A DNA stretch of 51,238 bases, from assembly GCF_000315625.1 (NCBI RefSeq), contig NW_005434563.1:48085-99322 (forward strand). The letters are read 5' to 3'. Source of the DNA: Guillardia theta CCMP2712. Lineage: Eukaryota > Protista > Cryptophyta. Below the pieces are notes generated by a model, which worked only from the letters and a program-made list of their open reading frames with translations, did not search any database and had not been told where the DNA came from. The position numbers and the translations under genes were made by a program. The number at the start of each line of letters is the position of its first letter. Positions within the stretch are counted from its first letter, which is position 1. Below, in pieces: positions 2,224-51,238 of this stretch.

Positions 2224-3811
2224 TCACATTACGCGCATGGAGCTCCTGTGAGGAGGTTGGGGGGAGGAAAACTTGCAGCCTGGCGGAGTGGTCAGTAGCT
2301 TTAAAATGTAGAACGAGGGATCAATCTGATCAGGGAGGGAGGGAGAGGAGGGAGGGAGGGAGGGAGGGAGGGAGGGAGGGAGGGAGGGAGGAGCGGGGGG
2401 GGGGGGGGTTAACAAGCAGGGAACCAGGAGGGGGGCTTNNNNNNNNNNNNNNNNNNNNNNNNNNNNNNNNNNNNNNNNNNNNNNNNNNNNNNNNNNNNNN
2501 NNNNNNNNNNNNNNNNNNNNNNNNNNNNNNNNNNNNNNNNNNNNNNNNNNNNNNNNNNNNNNNNNNNNNNNNNNNNNNNNNNNNNNNNNNNNNNNNNNNN
2601 NNNNNNNNNNNNNNNNNNNNNNNNNNNNNNNNNNNNNNNNNNNNNNNNNNNNNNNNNNNNNNNNNNNNNNNNNNNNNNNGAGGAGGAAATGCGTATCCCA
2701 TGCTCGGGGTCTGAGGGGAGGAGGGGAAGGAGGTGGCAGGCGCCATCTTGTAGCTGCCTGGCCCAGTGAGGTAGAAGGAGTTGTCGTCCTCGGCCTTGTC
2801 AGGGAGAATGTTTCTCTTCCGCAGGTCAGCTTCCAGGTCAAGGAGCTGCTATGACGTTAGATCCTACAGGGGAGAGGAGGGTGGGAGGACGAAAGACAGG
2901 AGAGTGGAGGTGATGGAAAGTCGTCTCAAGAGACATGGAGGGGAAAGAAGAGCACCGAACAGCGCAAGGCAAGAGAGAGAAGGGAGGGAGGTTGTAGGAG
3001 ACCTGGATCATGAAGCCTGTGTTGGGGTTTGCGATGGGCCTTCCCGTTCTCACTTGCTTCAGCGCGTTGACGAGCGTCATGGCCTGGTACTCCATCAAGT
3101 AGGCGCAGATGCAGGTGGAGCTGCGGGGGATCCCAGCGAAGCAGTGAACCAGCACGCCGCCGGCTCTGATCGTAAGATACTGTGTAAGAGTTCTGCGTGC
3201 AGGAGTGGAGAGGAGAAAAGCAGAGGGGAGGAAGGGTAGGATGCAAGGTGGGATGCTAGAAGCAGAGTTTGCTCACTTTCTCCCCTCATCGATGAACTTT
3301 GACGTCTCGGCGAAGAATCTCGAAAGGTTCTGCAAACAATCGTAAGAGATGAGCTGGTCCGATCCTCTACCCTCCTCCTCCTCTCTATCCTTTCACCTCT
3401 TCGGGCATGTCGTGAGAGTAGATAACTTTGTAAACAAAGTCATCGGGAGCATATGCTTCGCTCCGGCCTCCAAGCTCAGGCCTGTATGCTCCCCAGCCGA
3501 GCTGGTAAAGTTGTCAGCGAGAGAGTTGCCCACTCATCATCATTTTCACCAAGTTCAGCACGTGCGAGACGCCGAGCTGCTTCAGGCATGCAGTCTCGCA
3601 CGCTCCTTCCAGCCCACTGATGTACATCCCATCATACACCTGAGCCGGCATCAGCAAAATCCGCACAACCATTGCAGTGCTCTCAAACCTCCCATACGTT
3701 GGAGCAAGTAGGCTTCTTGTTCTGAGAGACGCCATGTCAACATATTCATCACCGCACAAGAGGGGACGAGGTTACAAGGTTTGCTTGATACGATGAAAAA
3801 CAGTTTCCCAT
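2224..3811 (-). CDS. Atypical dual-specificity protein phosphatase (DUSP15/22-like) with N-terminal MGNC acylation motif; 3' end uncertain (gap)
   Basis: Spliced: MGNCFSSYQANL|NKKPTCSN|VYDGMYISGLEGACETACLKQLGVSHVLNL|...FVYKVIYSHDMPEE|NLSRFFAETSKFIDEGRK|AGGVLVHCFAGIPRSSTCICAYLMEYQAMTLVNALKQVRTGRPIANPNTGFMIQ|LLDLEADL. The HCx5R motif, general-acid Asp, AYLM and PNxGF motifs are all present. Confidence 0.9.
2439..2679. other. Assembly gap (N run)
   Basis: Ns in sequence. Confidence 1.
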
Positions 3812-11173: not shown

Positions 11174-11273
11174 NNNNNNNNNNNNNNNNNNNNNNNNNNN
11201 NNNNNNNNNNNNNNNNNNNNNNNNNNNNNNNNNNNNNNNNNNNNNNNNNNNNNNNNNNNNNNNNNNNNNNNNN
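11174..11273. other. Assembly gap (exactly 100 N, probably an unknown-size placeholder)
   Basis: Ns in sequence. Confidence 1.
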
Positions 11274-11824: not shown

Positions 11825-21317
<9,493 letters not shown>

Positions 21318-43700: not shown

Positions 43701-44683
43701 AGGCGTGAAGACGGGGATGGCGAGCAAGGAAAAGTTCCTCATTGCCATTCAGAACTTCTTCCACAAGTCATACGATCAGATGCTCCAGCTCAAAAGGTCT
43801 TCCGCTCCTCCTCTCTGTCGAGTCTGACGCGCCTCCAGGGCCCTCGATCTGGCGTATGGGGAGGAGAAGACGTTTGCCTATGGCAACCTGTTCCAGGACG
43901 ACTCCAACTTCTCGCAGAACGAGTTTGCGGAGGAGTTTCGATCTCAGGTGCGGGGTAGAGCCCCTCGACTCGTAGGGGCTGAGTTGCTTTCCTTCAGACC
44001 ATTCAGGAGCGCGAGCAGCACATGGAAGAGCTGAGAGGCATGGTAGAGTCCATCTCTGACGCCAGCAGCCGTCGAATGTCGATCGAAGAGTTCAGGTACC
44101 CGCCCCCTGCTGCTGGTGCTGGTGCTGGTGCTGGTGCTGGTGCTGGTGCTGGTGCTGGTGCTGGTGCTGGTGCTGGTGCTGGTGCTGGTGCTGGTGCTGG
44201 TGCTGGTGCTGGTGCTGGTGCTGGTGCTGGTGCTGGTGCTGGTGCTGGTGCTGGTGCTGGTGCTGGTGCTCCTTACCCCATTGCTGCTGCAACTCCTTAC
44301 CCCATTGCTGGTGCTGGTGCTGGTGCTGCTCCTCCTCCTCCCTCTCCCTCTCCAACGCCTCTCTTACTGCTCGTCCTGCAGTAGCAGGATGCGTCTTCTT
44401 GACCCGGTCAAGTCGGAGGAGGACGTGGAGATCTACGTGTAAGGAGGAGGAGCCGTCAGTGGCGACTTGACTTGGGAGCAGGCGGCGAGGATGCAACTGC
44501 CCGTTCCCCAAGAGCCTTCCTGAGGAGGAGGACGCAGACTTTTTCCTACGCAACCTCCTGCACGGGGTCTGCAAGCCAGGGAAGCTGAAACAAGTTTCTG
44601 TACAGGACATGACGGAGGAGCTGCGAAGTTCGGGAACTTTATTCGCAGAAAACAATCAACACAAGCAAGCAGGGGAGCACTAA
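40715..44683 (+). CDS. TSNAXIP1: Translin-associated factor X-interacting protein 1-like (TSNAXIP1 family); start and last exon uncertain
   Basis: Coiled-coil exons followed by family-like motifs HLTPRPEW, FIECLGDSPEVPIFLR|YNGQVRNMRMRKRDAEKAIR|DIWQSK, WCYNL, DCALFLKILLG|..EDVYLDE, NLFQDDSNFSQNEFAEE, LLDPVKSEEDV. The assignment rests on recalled family motifs. Confidence 0.75.
44110..44270. repeat. Intronic (GGTGCT)n microsatellite
   Basis: Directly visible, between the GT donor near 44096 and the acceptor near 44381. Confidence 0.95.
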
Positions 44684-44723
44684 CGCACGAGGAGAAGGGA
44701 GCATGGAAGCGAGTCAGCCGCGT

Positions 44724-47700
44724 CTACCAGTAGTCGACGGGCTTGGCGGAGGCTCCATGCCGAGACATGTCGCTGGAAGTGATTTGAACGTCGAGGAGAG
44801 AGGCAGACTTGTCGGTCGCCCACTCGCGTTCGACCTCAGCCGCACTGATGGGAGCAGCGGTCGTCGCGATCCTCAGCTGGCTCTGAGACCTTGAGATGTC
44901 GAAGGGCAGAAGGGGGAAGGAGGCGACGCGCTTGGCCATGGCATGGAAGAAGACGAGGAAAGCGACGTACCTCTCGAGCGACGCGAACCTGTTCTCGTAC
45001 ATGATCTCTACAAGGTTCGTCTTGCCCAGCAAATCTAGCAGCTGCCCGCTCGCCTTGTCAAGCGCTCGGTCGAAGACCGTCGGCCCTGCAGCCTCGGCGA
45101 GGTTGTGTGAGGACTCGTCTCCTCCCTGTCCGCGCTTGAAGATCCGCCCAATGGTCTTGTCCAGCACGCCCCCATGGTGCTGGTCCGAATGAACCAGGTT
45201 GGCGCCAACGTGCGCCACTCGGCCATGGGAGGAGAGCGACTCGGCGTCGTTCCTCCTCGAGCTCAGGTCACTGTGCCTGCTCTTGTCGTGCCTGCTTCTG
45301 TCGTGCTTGCTGTTGTCATTGCTATAGAAGACTGGGGCGCTTGCGTCAGACGTCTTGTGAACTCCGATGTCGGCCTCTGCCGCCGCCCACTCGGTGAGGG
45401 ACTGGAACTTGCTCCTGAGCCTGTTGATGTCATTGGGAGCCATCTCCTGCAAGGGGGTCAGGAAGGAGGAGGAGGAGAGTCGACAGCAATCACCTGGAGG
45501 TAGGAGGAGCCGATGGGCTCAAGATTCTCTCCCTGGGCGAAGCTCTTGTTGTCGAAGTGATCGGCGTAGCTCGTCTGAGCTGACAGCATGTTCTTGTTGA
45601 GCTCCTTGATCGTTGCCATCCTCGACATGGGCTCGTTCTCGTCCACCCCTGCCAGCGACTCGCAGAGGAAGTGGGGCCGGAGAGTCTCGAGGGTAATGTT
45701 GCCGTCTCCGAGCATGGTGTTGCGGAACGGGTTGTGCCCGACGGTGATGATCTCGGGAGGTGAGAGGAGGTGAACAATCGCCTTCGCCTGCTGCATCGCC
45801 ATCATCACCCAGCTCTCTGCCTTGGTCTGCGAGAACAGCCTTCCGTCTGGACGCCCCACTGCCAGCAGGACCCCACGAGCCACCCGGTGCGTGAAGCGAT
45901 GGACAAGGTGATCGACGGCGTTGGCTCCATGGACGTCGATGGAGGCGATTGAGTAGCTGAGGGAGAAGAGCTTGGAGACGTAGCTTTCCAGCAGCTGATG
46001 CACGTAGGGGACGTCCCCGATGACCAGAGTCCTCTTGCCCAGCCTCGCAAACTGCTCCCTCCCCTGGAGAAGGCGGAGGATCATCGAGAAGAAGAGAGGA
46101 AGGAAGCTGTAGAGGAGCGAGTCGAAGGCGAGGAGGAGGTACTTGAGCCACTCAGGCCCCGTGTCATGGGTCACCCCTCGCATGATGCCGGTGAAGATAG
46201 GGTAGCCCGAGACCACCGTCCCGAAGATGTACATGGCGCTAAGACACCAGGAGTACGGCCCCTCCAGCACGTGCAAGGCCCAGAAGCGTCCCTGGAGCAG
46301 GACGTGAGGAGAGTGAGGAGAGAGTTGAGGAGAGAGATGGAGAAGGCGAACACTGGAAGAAAGAACGAGAGCAAGGAATGCAGGTAGAGGGAGCAAAAAA
46401 GGAGGACAAGGAGGGGAGAACAGGAAGAAGAGAGGATTAAATGAATTTACCTTGCGAACGAGTTTCTCGTGGGTAGCAGAAGGCATCTTGCCGCCATTGA
46501 GGTCGCAGCCAAGGATGTTTGGTATCGCCTTCACGCAGCAATCTCTGTTCAGCCGGTAGAGGTCCTTCACGTCCTCCTTTCTGAATCGATTCCCCGCCGC
46601 TTTGATGAACTGGACGTCCTCGTCGCAAACCACATGCTCTGCCAGGTACAGCAGCAGCTCGGTTAGCACGTGATGCGCTGCTACAGTAGACACTGTCAGC
46701 GCTTCCGAAGGCCTCCATCCCGCGTACGTCGTCCACACCCTCCCTGTCCATGGAGCGCCGATGTAGGCGTGCTGTCCTACAGCCGCCGACATCTTGGAGT
46801 CCACGGAGCCCGTGAGCACGAAGACTCGGTCGCCGCAGACTTTGCGAAGAGCATGGGTGGCGTGTAGGGTAGGGAAAGTCTGACCAGAGTGCGAGATAGA
46901 CACGACGATAGTCTCCTTGAGCGACATGGTGGTAGAGCAGAAGGCAAAACCTGACATGGGAGCCTCCCCGCGGGTGTTGGAGAGTACTCCGATGATCTTG
47001 TTGGAGGACATGGGGATGACGCGGAGGGTCGGGAAGAGCGACTGGAGGTCGGAGGCGAACTGCTCACCGAGCCACAGGGAGGCCTCTGCTCCTGTGACGA
47101 GCACATCGATCATCAGCCTCTTGGCATCGTCGCCTTTGCACTGCTCCTTGTCGAGGACCTTCTGGCGGATCATCTTGAAGAAGTGGCGGGACGTAGTGCG
47201 GTTCTTGCCATTCTGCTCGCTAAACTCCTTCCTCAGGAAGCTGAGGATGGGTGGGATGTCGGCAAGGTCCGCAGCTACCTTGTCCTTGGCCTGACTTGCG
47301 TCCCTGCTCAGCGACGGGCCATCTCCTCCGACTCCGACCAGGGAGAGGAGGGTCTCAGGCGCGATGAACTTCTCCTTGGGCATGAATCCTTGCTCCTTCT
47401 GCCGATGCACACGAAGGAAGAGGTTATTCTGCATGGAGAAAGGGGAGAACCGCCCAAAGTTGGGAGACGACTCTCCAAACTGCACCTGCATCCTTCCTGA
47501 GGCACACCAGGCTGCCTCCTGCGCCATCCTGTCCTGAGTGTTGGTGCAGATAGCGATCTCGATCACTTCCCCTCCATCTTCGTCCAAGTCGTGGCGATGC
47601 GTACACTTGGGGACCATGTTTGACTGGCCGCCCTGACTTTCTATGTCTCTCCCTCCTCCTCCTCTTCCTCCTCCCGACACGAGGCCGATCGGGACCATCT

Positions 47701-49573
47701 GAGCCGAAGCCTCTGAGCCCCAGAGCACAACTCCGAGGTCCTCGTTGAACGAGACGCTCATGGCCTGCCCGCGGGAGGCGATGGCGACGACGTTGGGGTC
47801 GAGCGTACAGCATGCGGTGATGCCGAACGATCCGTGGGCGCAAGAGAGGAACTTGTCAAGGGCAGTGAAGATGTCGTTCTCCAGGAAGTAGCATATTGAG
47901 TGCTGCGCTAGGAGCTCGCAGGTGCCGCAGCGATTGCGCAGCTCTCCCCCGATATCATACCAGGCCTTGGCCAGCACGGCAATCAGGTCTTTTACCTGCC
48001 TGCTGTCCTGGAGCACGGAAGAGGCAGGAACGCCTGTCACGTGCTGCTGGAAGATATTCTCAGCTATGGCAGTGATCTGATTCAGCAAGCTCTCCTCCAG
48101 GAGCATCTCCCCGTTGAGCGTGTGCTGGAAGGATGGCTGCACGCTCGTCTGGTACGCCAGCCGGATGGAGTGTTTCCATATCCCCTGCGTCCTCAGCAGC
48201 TCCATCATCCCTGCTACCTTGACGCTGTCACATGAAGCTATGGTCTTGTGCATATTCAACACGTTCTGCAGCCACCGCCCAAGGTCCTTCTGCGTCCGCA
48301 GGCTGTCAAACAGCTCCCAATAGTCAAAGTCCCCGTTGTGCGTCACGTACACCTCGTAGTTCTCGTCTGTCGCTTCCCACCCTTGACCCCCCACTCGCCA
48401 TACGCGAACGGTCTGCGGGCCGCTGAACCTGTGGGGGTGACTCTCGTTGAGTCGAGGAGCACTGGAGGTAGCAAAGCGCGTGTGCCCAAGGAACATCCTG
48501 CAGACCGCCTTCTTGTATTGGCTGCTCTTCATGATCCTGTTTCTGCAAAGATAGAAGCAGCAGAAGAAGGCGCGAAAGAGGGAGGCGAAGAAACCGTAGA
48601 TGGCGTTCACAACGAACCCAAGGCGGAAGCGAAACAGGAGGCCGCTCGCTAGATCTGCTCGCTTGCTCGGGACGTACCGAGTCCGATGCCCCGTCCCGTT
48701 GCTGAGTACCGTAACCAGTCCTCCGGCCTGCCCTCCACGAGCAGCGGTAGCCCCAGCCATGGCTCGGAGAGTCCGGGAGAAGTCAACAACACTCTTCTGT
48801 GCGGCCTCTATAATGAGCATCCCAAAGTTCCCGCAGTGAAAGCTGTCCCATCCCTTGACCCCAAGGTGCAGCCAGTCTGATGCGAGCGCCCCTGTTGCTA
48901 TCGCCATGGTTCCCGCAACGTTCAGAGTTCCCAGCAGCTCCCCGCTCTGGTATGAGACAGCAGCGACCGAGGCGAGGGAGCAGGACGCCAGCAACCCCGC
49001 CAGCTCGATCATCTTCCTCTTTTGCTCGCAGGGGCTTGCCTGTACCTTGACATGCGGCTCTTCTGCCTCCTTCGGCCATCTTGCAAACGGCGCAAGGCAA
49101 ACCAACCAGCTCGTCAAGGGCACGTGAAAGAGAGATCCTTGCCGGCTGCTGACCTTGCAGCCTAGCACCCATGCGGCGAGCACGTGGGCGCTCTCATGGA
49201 TCAACACAGACGCAACCATGACGCATCTGAGATAGAAGCCAACCAACATCGAGAGAAAGAACGTGTCGACAAGTTGATCCAAGCCATGACAGAGTGAGTA
49301 TGATATCATCATTACTATGGGGACCCAGCTCGGTAGCACTGCAACGACGCAAAGAAGGGGCATGGAAGGAGAGGATAGAGGAGAGAAGGAAGAGGAGCAA
49401 CAAAAAGACACAAATGTCAATATCTGCGAATCTGCATACAATGAGAATTCACCTGTTACTGTAGCGAGCAAGTGAAGCACTGCCATTCTTGCAACATGAA
49501 CTTTGCTCTCTTCTCCCACCATTTGTCCTTGCAGACACTCTGGCAGCTTGCTTGAAAACCACTCGCCAAGCAT
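44724..49573 (-). CDS. Membrane-associated GlmS-like fusion: HExxH (M50-like) TM region - class II glutamine amidotransferase - SIS - TM hairpin - SIS-like (start approximate)
   Basis: IHESAHVLAA in a hydrophobic N-terminus. GATase-II motifs CGNFG, RGGQAGG, GHTRFATSS, SHPH, THNGDF, CDS. SIS motifs TGAEASLWLG and SISHSGQTFPT. Hydrophobic hairpin YSWCLSAMYIFGTV...LLYSFLPLFFSMIL. Introns at 46292-46450 and 45447-45493. Confidence 0.85.
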
Positions 49574-51238
49574 TTTCCTGTGTCGACATATCATCAGAAC
49601 AAGAGCGTGTCTACAAGCAGGGATGCACAATGATGGAGAAACGATCCCTCAAGGGCAAGCTAAGGTGTGAAGGAATCATTAGAAGTATAGCGTAAGACAG
49701 TGGGTACAAACTACGCTCGAGGCGTTGAGCATTACGCGGGACTAAACAAACAACACAGCGAGAATGAAACTGGTGAAAGAAGAGTTCCCATAAGGAGAGC
49801 GAGGAGGGGAACGGGGAGGAGGATGAGACGGCAGCGGCGGCAGTAGCGGCGGCAGCAGTGGGAGTGAGAGCAGGACGACGGCAGGAGGTGTATGTTCGAT
49901 GGCAAGGTAGAGGAAACATGGGGGCGGATAGGGCAAGGAACTCCATTAAATTGGGGGTGGTGCCATTTTAAGGGGAGGGGGTCCCTGTTCGGGTGCTGTC
50001 CTTTGGTTTACAGGGGTGTAGGGGTACGATGCAGAAGTCAAAAGGGGGTAGTATGTATCACGGGTAGCCTGTCACGAGCTCATCGTAACACATCGTTGGT
50101 GATAGGTGTAGATAGTTGGGGGTGGAGGTATTTCACTGTGTAACAGGAGATCATATCGCTATGGTATTGAACTCGAATAGATGATTTTGACCACATACTA
50201 GGTTATGGTTGGAACATAGAAACATTTTCCAAGATTGCTCCAAAGGACGGGGTAGGGGTATTCAAAACAGGTGTCCATTATCAAGTGCCAGAATCAGCAA
50301 GGGTGTGAGAGTAAAGGGTGGGGTACTAGTACCCTATCATCCTTGCCGATCAACAAATTTCTATGAAAGAGGGGGGTACTGATGGTGCTACACCGGTACC
50401 ATGGTCAGTTGGTCCCTTGCAACTATCCATTTATACAATAAATATTAAATAACAACGTTTCGAATACACGGCCTCACGGATATCTAAATTTAGAAGAACT
50501 TTTCATCCACGGGTACGTAGACGGGGGCGGGGCTAATGTTTTCCTAGAATGGGGGGTTCTGGTCCTCATCGAGGTTGCAAAGTCGACCAGGGTGGTTATA
50601 CATAGAAAAACGTTCAAATGCAGCTAAGGAAATACTGAGACTTCTTCACGATGTCTGTAACAAGGAGGTGTACAAACATGTGTAGGTGGTAGGGGGTAGA
50701 CAAACTTGTAAATGTTTAAAAGTGTTTTACAATGCCCCATGGGGAATAATCGGTGGGTGCTACGAGCTTGTCAGAGGGGTACTTGATGGGGAGGGTAGTG
50801 TATCGGAAGATTTCCGCAGGCGATCGATTCAGCAGGTACAGCTGACACAACAGAAGTTGGCGGGAGGAACGCCAGCTAGGGGGCCCTGAAAGGGTAGGGA
50901 TGAAAGGGTCTGAATTTTCTATAAGGGTCTACCACATGATTATCAAGCCTTTGATATCAAGCCTTTGATAGAAGAAAAATGAGCGGACAATCATTCAACC
51001 GTCGTCAAACGGCTAGCCCCCCTACCAATGACTACCGTGTTATTAGTACCTACTCTATCCTCAAAGTTAAGTTAAAAATCCGATCATTCCACTCAAGGTT
51101 GTGGCAGCCCGACCCGGCACGCTGGTAGTCGCGCAAAAAACGGGCCCCGGCGGGGGACAGCCCGAGGTGAGCTTGCCTCAGAGACGAATAAGCCGCCAAA
51201 TGGTTGCCGGTCGGAGCAGCACGGCTTGCGCATCAGCT

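What the first reader, a model, noticed from the sequence alone, without database searches (positions are those of the whole stretch)
44724..49573. Membrane-tethered GlmS-like enzyme whose Ntn catalytic cysteine sits behind a ~250-aa HExxH metalloprotease-like pro-domain
Seen: a hydrophobic N-terminal region carries HESAH (49184-49198), IELAGLLAS and ALASD, resembling the site-2/M50 protease pattern HExxH...AGPxxN...D. Immediately after it comes CGNFG (Cys codon 48833-48835) and an intact class-II GATase motif set (RGxxAG, GHTRFAT, HPH, HNGD), then SIS-type domains. Established: class-II (Ntn) amidotransferases such as GlmS, PurF and AsnB need Cys1 as a free N-terminus, and some PurF enzymes remove a short propeptide to expose it. 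Inference: this protein must be cleaved before the Cys to be active, either by Ntn autoprocessing or by its own fused intramembrane metalloprotease. That would make it a self-contained, proteolysis-gated amidotransferase or sensor, distinct from cytosolic GFAT. I recall similar long uncharacterised proteins in cyanobacteria and algae but cannot verify this.
Basis: partly seen in the sequence, partly recalled or inferred. Interest (0 to 1): 0.85.

Follow-up and report, generated by a model that had tools for sequence, protein, structure and literature searches.

The report
Amidotransferase hidden behind membrane protease-like domain
This alga makes one large membrane protein in which a small site-2-protease-like module sits directly in front of the catalytic cysteine of a GlmS-like glutamine amidotransferase. 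The enzyme therefore probably has to be cut before it can work, and the same uncharacterised design is conserved in cyanobacteria and many algae.

Summary
The window is Guillardia theta nuclear DNA. Spliced transcript contigs from three studies join four exons (44724-49522, minus strand) into one ORF of about 1,492 aa. The public gene model is cut short at its N-terminus and lacks both key features.

- **Residues ~25-181** are a minimal peptidase-M50/site-2-protease fold, supported by a profile hit to RseP (E 3e-5) and by the top four structural matches of 48,161 chains. HESAH and the Asp ligand are present.
- **Cys192**, 14 residues after that Asp, aligns with Cys1 of GlmS. It heads a class-II glutaminase fold with all catalytic motifs invariant.
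- **The downstream SIS assignment** rests on a motif and weak scores only.

The family occurs in about 111 of 185,579 prokaryote species genomes, mostly cyanobacteria, and in many algae.

The comparative data give two results. First, the N-domain was lost at least 7 times independently in cyanobacteria, and each time the gene starts exactly at ATG-Cys. This argues that the Cys must become N-terminal, so fused forms need cleavage. Second, the HExxH glutamate is kept in every algal member (31 of 31 in the alignment) but is HGxGH in about 62 of 80 prokaryotic loci. A canonical fused-protease mechanism therefore cannot hold for the whole family.

Who makes the cut is unresolved: Ntn self-cleavage about 0.4, M50 cis-cleavage about 0.3. 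No paper describing this architecture was found.

The parts
44724..49522 (-). Whole coding region, four exons, about 1,492 aa. The start codon is uncertain: in-frame ATGs lie at 49573, 49522 and 49486.
   Evidence: Spliced contigs in runs X1, X3 and X4. One X4 contig spans 44600-49535 with all three introns removed. Translation has no internal stop.
49453..49522 (-). Exon 1, encoding the start of the first membrane helix.
   Evidence: Joint 49338/49453 in three runs. GT at 49452-49451.
49339..49452 (-). Intron 1, 114 nt, GT-AG.
   Evidence: There is a gap at this place in the alignment with the transcript-derived orthologue P0001.
46451..49338 (-). Exon 2. It carries the M50-like domain, the linker, Cys192, the glutaminase domain and the first SIS-like region.
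46292..46450 (-). Intron 2, 159 nt, GT-AG.
45494..46291 (-). Exon 3. It carries the membrane-helix insert and the second conserved (SIS2-like) region.
45447..45493 (-). Intron 3, 47 nt, GT-AG.
44724..45446 (-). Exon 4. It carries a variable region, the conserved C-terminal hydrophobic helix and tail, and the stop codon.
   Evidence: It matches the C-terminus of P0002 and of cyanobacterial homologues.
48866..49336 (-). Minimal peptidase-M50/site-2-protease-like membrane domain, residues ~25-181.
   Evidence: Pfam M50 at E 1.5e-4, below the cut-off. Profile against PDB hits Aquifex RseP at E 3.3e-5. AF2 pLDDT 87.9. VIA-align top four are SpoIVFB, KkRseP, MjS2P and AaRseP at Z 8.6-6.8. The ESM Atlas neighbours listed (10 rows) are mostly annotated Peptidase_M50/M50B, the rest unnamed.
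49184..49198 (-). HESAH (H71, E72, H75), the putative metal ligands and catalytic Glu.
   Evidence: The two His are conserved in at least 90% of 71 homologues. The Glu is E in 31 and G in 35.
48983..49000 (-). AGLLAS, the counterpart of the M50 'GPxxN' helix motif.
   Evidence: It aligns to GGPLFN of Aquifex RseP. Gly is near-invariant. The last position is S in E-type and N in G-type members.
48875..48877 (-). Asp178 codon, the putative third metal ligand at the cytosolic end of the last helix of the N-domain.
   Evidence: D in 70 of 71 sequences. The model range aligns with the SpoIVFB core.
48836..48874 (-). 13-residue linker ending in F-H before the Cys. It contains the presumed scissile bond H191|C192.
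   Evidence: pLDDT below 50 in the two-domain model. Position -2 is F or L, and position -1 is Y, N, F or H across the family. The Asp-to-Cys spacing is exactly 14 in 34 of 35 G-type members.
48833..48835 (-). Cys192 codon, equivalent to the Ntn nucleophile Cys1 of GlmS.
   Evidence: Invariant in 71 of 71 sequences. hhalign places it on GlmS Cys1. The preceding codon is CAC, which is not a start codon.
47396..48835 (-). Class-II (Ntn) glutaminase domain, GlmS/GFAT-like, with a helical insertion of about 110 aa.
   Evidence: AF2 pLDDT 84.9. Foldseek hits GFAT-1 and the GlmS glutaminase domain at E about 1e-6, with 1xff at TMt 0.69, then PurF. RG.Q..G, H.R..T, H, HNGD and DS are invariant.
46865..46897 (-). 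ISHSGQTFPTL, a SIS-type phosphate-binding-like motif in the first SIS-like region.
   Evidence: S-G-Q-T-F is invariant in 40 homologues. It aligns to GlmS SQSGET with weak statistics. Protein-language-model neighbours are SIS clusters at 0.87.
46058..46291 (-). Hydrophobic insert with about 2-3 membrane helices, lying between the two SIS-like regions.
   Evidence: Hydropathy peaks at residues ~996-1020 and 1039-1057. The region is conserved in homologues.
45839..46039 (-). Second conserved block, from GKRTLVIGD through YVSKLFSLSY to GRPDGR. It is collinear with the second SIS subdomain of GlmS by eye only.
   Evidence: Invariant columns in alignment A3. hhalign is not significant.
44844..44996 (-). 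Conserved C-terminal hydrophobic helix and S-Q-S tail.
   Evidence: Invariant or near-invariant columns 736-784 of A3, shared with cyanobacteria.

Best explanation
The region is one expressed Guillardia theta gene. It encodes a polytopic membrane protein of about 1,492 aa that belongs to an uncharacterised family found in cyanobacteria, purple sulfur bacteria and algae.

**Architecture (shown).** The order is: a four-helix minimal M50/site-2-protease fold with H-E-x-x-H and an Asp ligand; a 13-residue linker; Cys192 heading a GlmS-type Ntn glutaminase domain; a SIS-like region; membrane helices; a second conserved region; and a conserved C-terminal helix.

**Mechanism (inferred).**
- The protein is a zymogen. 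The glutaminase can work only after the conserved F-[YFNH]|Cys bond is cut and Cys192 becomes the free N-terminus. I put this at about 0.75.
- By the positive-inside rule and site-2-protease topology, that bond lies on the cytosolic face, 14 residues from the metal-ligand Asp.
- I think the most likely catalyst across the family is the Ntn domain itself, through autoproteolysis as reported for PurF/GPRAT propeptides. I put this at about 0.4.
- In that reading the M50-derived domain acts as a membrane-embedded, metal-binding pro-domain that masks or gates the enzyme, and is dispensable once lost.
- In algal members such as this one, which keep the full HExxH...D set, the M50 module may itself make or assist the cut. 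This is listed as the main rival, at about 0.3.

**Cellular role.** The role is unknown. Prokaryotic neighbours are mostly signalling genes (hybrid two-component proteins, GGDEF, Crp, Ser/Thr kinase) and diatom members carry EF-hands. This points to a signal-controlled enzyme that works in addition to housekeeping GlmS.
For: - **One transcript.** Three GT-AG introns are removed in contigs of three studies. One contig covers 44600-49535. Transcript-derived orthologues P0001 and P0003 have the same fused ORF. Two G. theta paralogues carry HEAFH...SD...FH-CGNFG in a single exon.
- **M50 fold.**
- **Ntn glutaminase.** Fold match to GFAT/GlmS. Cys aligned to Cys1. Catalytic motifs invariant in 71 sequences.
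- **The Cys must be N-terminal.** Ten of 80 prokaryotic loci start at ATG-Cys, with stop codons 2-16 codons upstream and no N-domain ORF. These genomes have no separately encoded N-domain. The short forms arose at least 7-9 times, and monophyly is rejected at p-AU 7e-89.
- **No internal start in the fused forms.** The codon before Cys is TAY, AAY, TTY or CAY, never a start codon.
- **Autoprocessing precedent.** GPRAT propeptides are described as autocatalytically cleaved to expose the N-terminal Cys (PMC7056826).
- **Evidence against canonical M50 catalysis family-wide.** E48 is Gly in about 62 of 80 prokaryotic loci, and E and G interchange among close Chromatiaceae relatives.
- **Extra enzyme, not a GlmS replacement.** All three genomes checked also hold a canonical glmS.
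- **Signalling context.**
Against: - No protein-level data exist, and cleavage has not been observed.
- If self-cleavage were constitutive, the strong conservation of the M50 metal ligands would be unexplained. These are H, H and D in at least 90% of members.
- The same applies to the exactly fixed 14-residue Asp-to-Cys spacing in the prokaryotic type, and to many invariant polar residues in the membrane domain. These features fit an active or ligand-binding site better than a passive anchor.
- Algal members keep the Glu in 31 of 31 aligned sequences.
- The known self-processed class-II propeptides are short, about 11 aa in B. subtilis PurF (from my own knowledge; PMC7056826 says only 'short'). 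None is a membrane domain.
- The SIS assignment, and therefore the acceptor substrate, is unproven.
Confidence: 0.42

Rival explanations
1. Cis-acting intramembrane protease switch. The fused M50 module is an active, single-turnover site-2-type protease that cuts its own linker at H191|C192. This is comparable to SpoIVFB removing the pro-sequence of pro-sigma-K. Glutaminase activation would then be a regulated proteolytic event.
For: - The M50 fold and its three metal ligands are conserved.
- The HExxH Glu is present in 31 of 31 eukaryotic members aligned and in both G. theta paralogues.
- The scissile bond lies 14 residues after the Asp ligand on the same (cytosolic) side. The spacing is fixed at 14 in 34 of 35 prokaryotic-type members, with a conserved [TS]-G turn and a conserved F-[YN] at P2-P1.
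- AF2 puts F-H in a beta-bridge at low confidence, and the linker is otherwise flexible.
- The best structural match is the SpoIVFB:pro-sigma-K complex.
- Cyanobacterial HGxGH members carry an invariant Glu (35 of 35) about 19 residues downstream, in N-[IL]-x-E-x-R. Algal members lack it, so it could be a relocated base.
- The gene neighbourhood is signalling-related.
Against: - Most prokaryotic members lack the canonical Glu.
- Proteobacterial HGxGH members show no alignable substitute Glu, and they sit next to HExxH relatives.
- The E-type has Ser where M50 proteases have the GPxxN Asn.
- Pfam M50 scores stay below the gathering cut-off.
- No model coordinates were available to measure the metal-to-scissile-bond distance.
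- The Ntn domain has a documented ability to self-process.
Confidence: 0.3
2. No cleavage. The protein works as an intact chain. The glutaminase-like domain binds or senses glutamine, or uses the internal Cys without a free alpha-amine. The M50-like domain is a pseudo-protease membrane anchor or metal sensor.
For: - The canonical Glu is lost in most prokaryotic members.
- The neighbourhood is signalling-rich and some members carry EF-hand fusions, which suits a sensor.
- No cleavage data exist.
Against: - Every residue needed for Ntn catalysis is invariant.
- Every independent loss of the N-domain ends precisely at Met-Cys. That precision is hard to explain unless the free N-terminal Cys matters.
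- One Cys-less variant (P0075) and one with an in-frame stop (L082) are rare exceptions.
Confidence: 0.18
3. Artefact. The N-terminal membrane part belongs to a separate gene or to the untranslated leader, as the public gene model starting at MFLGHTRFAT implies.
For: The NCBI model GUITHDRAFT_155261 (P0002) starts 116 residues after the Cys.
Against: - Spliced contigs join everything in one frame.
- Orthologous transcripts, paralogues and more than 60 prokaryotic genes have the same continuous ORF.
- The truncated model would lack the invariant Cys and the R-G-x-Q motif.
Confidence: 0.02

Closest known systems
GlmS / GFAT (glutamine--fructose-6-phosphate amidotransferase, class-II Ntn GATase plus two SIS subdomains)
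   Same: - The glutaminase fold is the best structural match.
- Cys aligns to Cys1.
- The R-G, H-T-R-x-A-T, H-P-H-like, N-G and D-S/T motifs appear in the same order.
- A S-x-S-G-[QE]-T motif follows at the expected distance.
   Different: - The glmS model scores 20 bits against a cut-off of 418.
- The Cys is internal, behind a membrane domain of about 190 aa.
- The glutaminase domain has a helical insert of about 110 aa.
- Membrane helices are inserted between the SIS-like regions.
- The isomerase catalytic residues cannot be aligned.
- The genomes checked keep a normal glmS as well.
PurF / GPRAT with N-terminal propeptide (self-processing class-II amidotransferase)
   Same: It is a class-II Ntn glutaminase made as a precursor whose Cys is exposed by removal of an N-terminal extension (PMC7056826). 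PurF is the second-best fold match.
   Different: - The known propeptides are short and soluble. Here the extension is a folded, conserved four-helix membrane domain with a metal site.
- The acceptor domain is different.
Site-2 proteases (peptidase family M50): SpoIVFB, RseP, MjS2P
   Same: - The core fold is shared.
- HExxH lies in a membrane helix, there is a G-x-x-x-[NS] helix, and an Asp ligand sits at the cytosolic end of a later helix.
- SpoIVFB likewise removes an N-terminal pro-sequence to activate a cytosolic protein.
   Different: - Only the minimal core is present, with no PDZ or CBS domain.
- Pfam scores are below the cut-off.
- The Glu is replaced by Gly in most prokaryotic members.
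- The presumed substrate is fused to the protease in the same chain.
Two-chain Ntn hydrolases (penicillin acylase, gamma-glutamyltranspeptidase, glycosylasparaginase)
   Same: A long polypeptide precedes the nucleophile and is separated from it by autoproteolysis. The N-terminal piece can remain as a subunit.
   Different: - The Ntn sub-fold family is different.
- Their N-terminal chains are soluble parts of the same fold, not an unrelated membrane protease domain.

Membership tests
Class-II (Ntn) glutamine amidotransferase domain | Four-layer alpha-beta-beta-alpha Ntn fold matching solved class-II glutaminase domains | tested here: met
   AF2 model pLDDT 84.9. Foldseek hits GFAT-1 at E 8.5e-7 and the GlmS glutaminase domain 1xff at TMt 0.69, then PurF.
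Class-II (Ntn) glutamine amidotransferase domain | Catalytic Cys equivalent to Cys1, with the Arg26-type, Asn-Gly oxyanion and Asp123-type residues | tested here: met
   hhalign aligns Cys168 (A1 numbering) to GlmS Cys1 and RG.Q.GG to RGYDSAG, at probability 93% and E 3.4e-7. C, RG, H.R..T, HNGD and DS are invariant in 71 sequences. The Asn-Gly and Asp correspondences are by motif order only.
Class-II (Ntn) glutamine amidotransferase domain | Cys is the first residue of the mature protein | not testable with these tools
   The gene encodes about 191 residues before it. The only indirect support is that independent N-domain losses always give Met-Cys.
GlmS (TIGR01135 / PRK00331) | Whole-protein score above the curated cut-off | tested here: not met
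   20.1 bits against 418 for TIGR01135, and 27.8 bits against 381 for PRK00331. Only the GHTRFAT stretch matches.
GlmS (TIGR01135 / PRK00331) | Two SIS subdomains carrying the isomerase catalytic residues | tested here: inconclusive
   - The profile against PDB gives nothing.
- Pfam SIS hits 2 of 40 members at E about 0.03.
- hhalign aligns only the SQSGQT motif, at E 0.006-0.02 and probability 2-6%.
- Language-model neighbours are SIS clusters at 0.81-0.92.
Peptidase family M50 (site-2 protease) | Core membrane fold of solved M50 proteases | tested here: met
   VIA-align against 48,161 chains ranks SpoIVFB at Z 8.6, KkRseP at 8.3, MjS2P at 7.4 and AaRseP at 6.8. The next, unrelated chain scores 6.0. 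The Foldseek top two are MjS2P and SpoIVFB, though not significant by E-value. Of the 10 ESM Atlas neighbour rows listed, most are annotated Peptidase_M50/M50B and the rest are unnamed; TM 0.52-0.62.
Peptidase family M50 (site-2 protease) | Sequence score above Pfam's gathering threshold | tested here: not met
   The window domain scores 21.6 bits against 27.2. Ten of 69 members hit at E up to 0.1, the best at 2.7e-6. The profile against PDB sequences does reach E 3.3e-5 for Aquifex RseP.
Peptidase family M50 (site-2 protease) | HExxH plus a downstream Asp as the zinc site, with the catalytic Glu | tested here: met
   Met for this protein: H71, E72, H75 and D178. Across the family, H, H and D are at least 90% conserved. 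The Glu is conserved only in the algal type, at 31 E against 35 G, and in 3 of 80 prokaryotic loci.
Peptidase family M50 (site-2 protease) | Proteolytic activity | not testable with these tools
   No biochemical data exist.

The most novel reading that the evidence does not exclude
The M50 module is a working site-2-type protease whose only or first substrate is its own chain. Regulated intramembrane-type proteolysis would unmask the Ntn cysteine and switch on a membrane-bound GlmS-like amidotransferase. This may happen under Ca2+ or two-component control. In cyanobacteria it might use a variant active site, HGxGH plus a relocated Glu. It would be the first enzyme zymogen activated by a fused intramembrane metalloprotease.
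Probability: 0.25. Interest if true: 0.88.

Novelty: new variant of a known kind. Interest (0 to 1): 0.7.

Why it matters
Ntn amidotransferases are textbook enzymes, and their nucleophile must be residue 1. The known precursors carry only short propeptides.

This family is conserved from cyanobacteria to cryptophytes, diatoms and green algae. It places a folded site-2-protease-like membrane domain exactly in front of that residue. Evolution has also run the deletion experiment several times, always ending at Met-Cys.

This gives a directly testable system for two open questions. One is how Ntn precursors are processed. The other is what minimal site-2 protease cores, with or without the canonical Glu, can do.

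The work also corrects a truncated public gene model. It marks an uncharacterised, signalling-linked enzyme that is found mostly, though not only, in aquatic phototrophs. About 689 cluster representatives at 50% identity match the N-domain profile, and many of these are fragments.

Tried and rejected
- **Single-sequence PDB search.** phmmer of the ORF against PDB sequences gave nothing.
- **C-terminal half.** The profile against PDB and Pfam gave no significant hit. hhalign of its slices against three GlmS sequences aligned only the SQSGQT motif.
- **Complex prediction.** N-domain against linker plus glutaminase domain gave no verdict (score 0.00). This is not evidence either way.
- **Separately encoded N-domain.** A search of five genomes with Met-Cys forms found only weak hits (E about 1e-3) to ordinary 410-550-aa M50 proteins.
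- **Stand-alone N-domain proteins.** A search of 1.84 billion representatives returned many short hits. Most reach the CGNFG end of the profile and look like contig fragments, so they are not evidence of free-standing domains.
- **Relocated glutamate.** Cyanobacterial HGxGH members have an invariant Glu in N-[IL]-x-E-x-R. Proteobacterial HGxGH members have no alignable counterpart. The apparent E48/K70 swap in L058 depends on the alignment. I kept this as a lead only.
- **Giant members.** Pfam on the extra ~700-1,100 N-terminal residues of giant members (Elusimicrobia, P0039 and others) found nothing.
- **Raw RNA reads.** Run X22 covered only the 3' part patchily, so there is no information on the 5' end.
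- **Literature.** Four searches found no description of this architecture or family.
- **Earlier findings.** A search near this place returned nothing.
- **Plastid targeting.** No long presequence is possible upstream, because an in-frame stop lies at 49631-49633. Localisation is left open.

Full report
**What is there**

The window is nuclear DNA of the cryptophyte Guillardia theta CCMP2712. The annotated protein GUITHDRAFT_155261 (P0002) is 100% identical to part of the region.

The 1390-aa ORF at 45458-49630 (minus strand) and the 242-aa ORF at 44724-45452 are pieces of one gene.
- Alignment with a transcript-derived orthologue (P0001, 79% identity) showed two in-frame gaps.
- The DNA at those gaps, and at the end of the big ORF, has GT...AG borders.
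- Assembled contigs from three public runs of three different studies skip exactly 49339-49452, 46292-46450 and 45447-45493.
- One contig runs from 44600 to 49535 with all three introns removed.

The spliced coding sequence from ATG 49522 is 4,479 nt and encodes 1,492 aa with no internal stop. ATGs at 49573 and 49486 are alternative starts, and an in-frame stop lies at 49631-49633.

The public model starts at MFLGHTRFAT. It therefore lacks the membrane domain, the catalytic Cys and the R-G-x-Q motif, so it is truncated at the N-terminus. The codon before the Cys is CAC.

**The N-terminal domain is a minimal site-2 protease (M50) fold**

- The single sequence gives only a sub-threshold Pfam M50 hit: 18.6-21.6 bits against a cut-off of 27.2.
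- A profile of 69 homologous N-domains hits the solved RseP orthologue of Aquifex (E 3.3e-5), then those of Kangiella and E. coli. It aligns the HExxH helix and the 'GPxxN' helix.
- An AlphaFold model of the domain has pLDDT 87.9 and pTM 0.84.
- Against 48,161 PDB representatives, its four best matches are SpoIVFB (Z 8.6), Kangiella RseP (8.3), M. jannaschii S2P (7.4) and Aquifex RseP (6.8). The first unrelated chain scores 6.0.
- The Foldseek top two are the same family, although not significant by E-value.
- Of the 10 ESM Atlas neighbour rows listed, most are annotated Peptidase_M50 or M50B and the rest are unnamed.
- H71, H75 and D178 of the full protein, and the Gly of AGLLAS, are at least 90% conserved in 71 homologues.

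Hydropathy and the positive-inside rule put the HExxH and Asp ends of the helices, and the chain that follows, on the cytosolic side (and my inference from site-2-protease topology).

**The Cys heads a GlmS-type Ntn glutaminase domain**

- A model of N-domain plus the next 480 residues has pLDDT 84.9. The nine residues before the Cys fall below 50.
- Foldseek matches the second part to human GFAT-1 and the E. coli GlmS glutaminase domain (E about 1e-6, 1xff TMt 0.69), then to PurF.
- Profile-profile comparison with three GlmS sequences puts the Cys on GlmS Cys1, and RG.Q.GG on RGYDSAG (probability 93%, E 3.4e-7).
- C-G-N-x-G, R-G-x-Q, H-x-R-x-x-T, H, H-N-G-D and D-S are invariant in 71 sequences.

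**The rest of the protein**

The C-terminal half is highly conserved, with about 47 invariant columns in 40 sequences. Sequence evidence for SIS is weak:
- a S-x-S-G-Q-T motif aligned to GlmS SQSGET at poor probability;
- two of 40 members touching Pfam SIS at E about 0.03;
- a MurR/RpiR hit at E 0.16;
- language-model neighbours annotated SIS at 0.81-0.92.

Hydrophobic helices lie between the two conserved blocks. I call this half 'probably SIS-like, unproven'. The glmS family model is far below its cut-off. Three genomes that carry the family also have a normal glmS. This is an extra enzyme, not GlmS itself.

**Distribution**

- 115 homologues were found among 5.8 billion clusters. They come from cryptophytes, green algae including Klebsormidium, haptophytes, diatoms, dinoflagellates and cyanobacteria.
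- 111 loci were found in 185,579 prokaryotic species genomes. Most are cyanobacteria, with some Chromatiaceae, one Celeribacter and Elusimicrobia MAGs.
- 689 representatives at 50% identity match the N-domain profile, many of them fragments.
- G. theta has two further copies as an inverted duplicate on another contig. Both carry HEAFH...SD...FH-CGNFG in one exon. An earlier first-reader note, s1-437116, appears to concern these copies.

**Comparative evidence on mechanism**

1. *N-domain losses.* Ten of 80 prokaryotic loci, and a clade of eukaryotic sequences, lack the N-domain.
   - In every prokaryotic case the gene begins ATG-TGY, with stop codons 2-16 codons upstream and often the neighbouring gene ending 7-55 bp away.
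   - Those genomes have no separate N-domain gene.
   - On a tree of the glutaminase domain, the Met-Cys forms need 9 changes (at least 7 forced by well-supported branches). Holding them as one clade costs 856 log-likelihood units, p-AU 7e-89.
   - Repeated deletions that always stop exactly at the Cys are what one expects if the Cys must be the mature N-terminus.
   - In the fused forms the preceding codon is never a start codon, so only proteolysis can expose it.
2. *Two N-domain types.* They covary perfectly.

| Feature | Type E | Type G |
|---|---|---|
| Metal motif | HExxH | HG[LF]GH |
| 'GPxxN' helix | G-x-x-x-S | G-x-x-F-N |
| Asp-to-Cys spacer | 12-69 residues | exactly 14 in 34 of 35 |
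| Linker | variable | conserved D-x-x-A-x-x-[TS]-G-x-A-[DE]-x-[FL]-[YN]\|C |
| Found in | all algal members aligned (31 of 31) and 3 of 80 prokaryotic loci | about 62 of 80 prokaryotic loci |

   - Both types keep F or L at position -2 and an aromatic residue or Asn at position -1.
   - Type G also has many invariant polar residues, including a Glu in N-[IL]-x-E-x-R.
3. *Proteobacterial members.* They have a near-canonical AGPAAN motif. They switch between HGxGH and HExxH among close relatives, and show no alignable substitute Glu.

**Reading**

I put the zymogen inference, that cleavage before the Cys is required, at about 0.75.

For the catalyst there are two live candidates.
[quoted passage not shown] It does not depend on the missing Glu. 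I give it about 0.4.
- *M50 cis-cleavage.* It is favoured by the conserved metal site, the fixed spacing, the conserved P2-P1 residues, the universal Glu in algae and the SpoIVFB/pro-sigma-K analogy. A single-turnover intramolecular cut may also tolerate a poor general base (my inference). I give it about 0.3 overall, and somewhat more for the Guillardia protein itself.
- *No cleavage.* I give this about 0.18.

**Context**

In prokaryotes the immediate upstream neighbour is often a signalling protein.
- Multi-receiver/HisKA hybrid proteins lie on the same strand 7-60 bp away in one cyanobacterial clade. Receiver domains occur in 11 of 61 upstream neighbours.
- GGDEF-PAS proteins are divergently placed in Pleurocapsales (7 of 61).
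- Crp-type regulators occur in picocyanobacteria.
- A Ser/Thr kinase lies next to the gene in Pleurocapsa PCC 7319.
- Diatom members carry an EF-hand pair in the variable C-terminal region.

These loci are not independent samples. Still, the theme suggests a signal-controlled enzyme.

**Novelty**

No Pfam family covers the protein beyond the weak hits. Sources call it 'hypothetical' or 'glutamine amidotransferase type-2 domain-containing'. Four full-text searches found no description.

Both modules are known kinds. Their fusion, with the protease-like domain as pro-domain of an Ntn enzyme, appears to be new.

**Limits**

- There are no protein-level data.
- The C-terminal half was not folded.
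- The run types are guesses by the tool, although the splicing shows that the contigs derive from RNA.
- The trees are FastTree and quick IQ-TREE trees, and the root is unknown.

Noticed in passing
window 44724-49522 (-) compared with P0002: The public gene model GUITHDRAFT_155261 starts at MFLGHTRFAT (about 48487). It omits the M50-like domain and the catalytic Cys. Introns 2 and 3 agree with the model.
   Followed up: yes
G000:C1:1085763-1087579 (+) and 1100115-1101931 (-); loci L094-L096: There are two further G. theta copies of the family, arranged as an inverted duplicate about 15 kb apart. Each has HEAFH...SD...FH-CGNFG in one exon. Two TAG codons fall inside one matched stretch, which may mark an intron or a break.
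   Followed up: partly
L050:293-7362, L009, L025, L034, L037, L045, L054, L057, L083 (upstream of the family gene): Two or three tandem genes of 600-850 aa lie on the same strand, ending 7-60 bp before the family gene. They comprise a Tll0287-like/HAMP/HisKA/HATPase/REC hybrid kinase, a REC-HisKA-ParA-like protein and a triple-REC/PAS protein. This looks like an operon.
   Followed up: partly
P0094, P0097, P0027 (diatom-type members): An EF-hand pair is inserted in the variable region between the second conserved block and the C-terminal helix, for example at P0094 residues 1175-1238.
   Followed up: partly
P0083 (950 aa, metagenome): Here the N-domain and glutaminase domain are followed by a cation-diffusion-facilitator zinc-transporter domain (residues 655-934) instead of the usual C-terminal half. 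It may be a real fusion or a chimeric assembly. It is of interest given the metal site of the N-domain.
   Followed up: no
P0075; L082:7400-8700: There are rare degenerate members. P0075 begins M-Y-G-N-F-G and has no Cys. The Cyanobium locus L082 has an in-frame stop inside RGAQA*GG.
   Followed up: no
L005, L063 (Elusimicrobia MAGs); P0032, P0039, P0056: Giant members of 1,900-3,000 aa carry 700-1,100 extra N-terminal residues with no Pfam match. Some have C-C-G-N-Q-G or C-G-N-E-G instead of C-G-N-F-G.
   Followed up: partly
window ~48557-48634 (residues 263-288): The helix inserted in the glutaminase domain between K-R and GHTRFAT is strongly hydrophobic in G. theta (LGFVVNAIYGFFASLF...) but amphipathic in cyanobacteria. 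It may be an extra membrane contact.
   Followed up: no
window 44110-44290: A long (GCTGGT)n microsatellite lies about 430 nt downstream of the stop codon.
   Followed up: no
window 2439-2679, 11174-11273, 18584-19546: Runs of N mark assembly gaps. The last one explains the apparent low-GC block at 18-20 kb in the composition profile.
   Followed up: yes
window 49611-49946 (-): A 111-aa ORF in another frame lies just upstream and overlaps the candidate start region. One transcript contig continues through it without a joint. It is probably a 5' leader or uORF and does not look like a targeting presequence.
   Followed up: no
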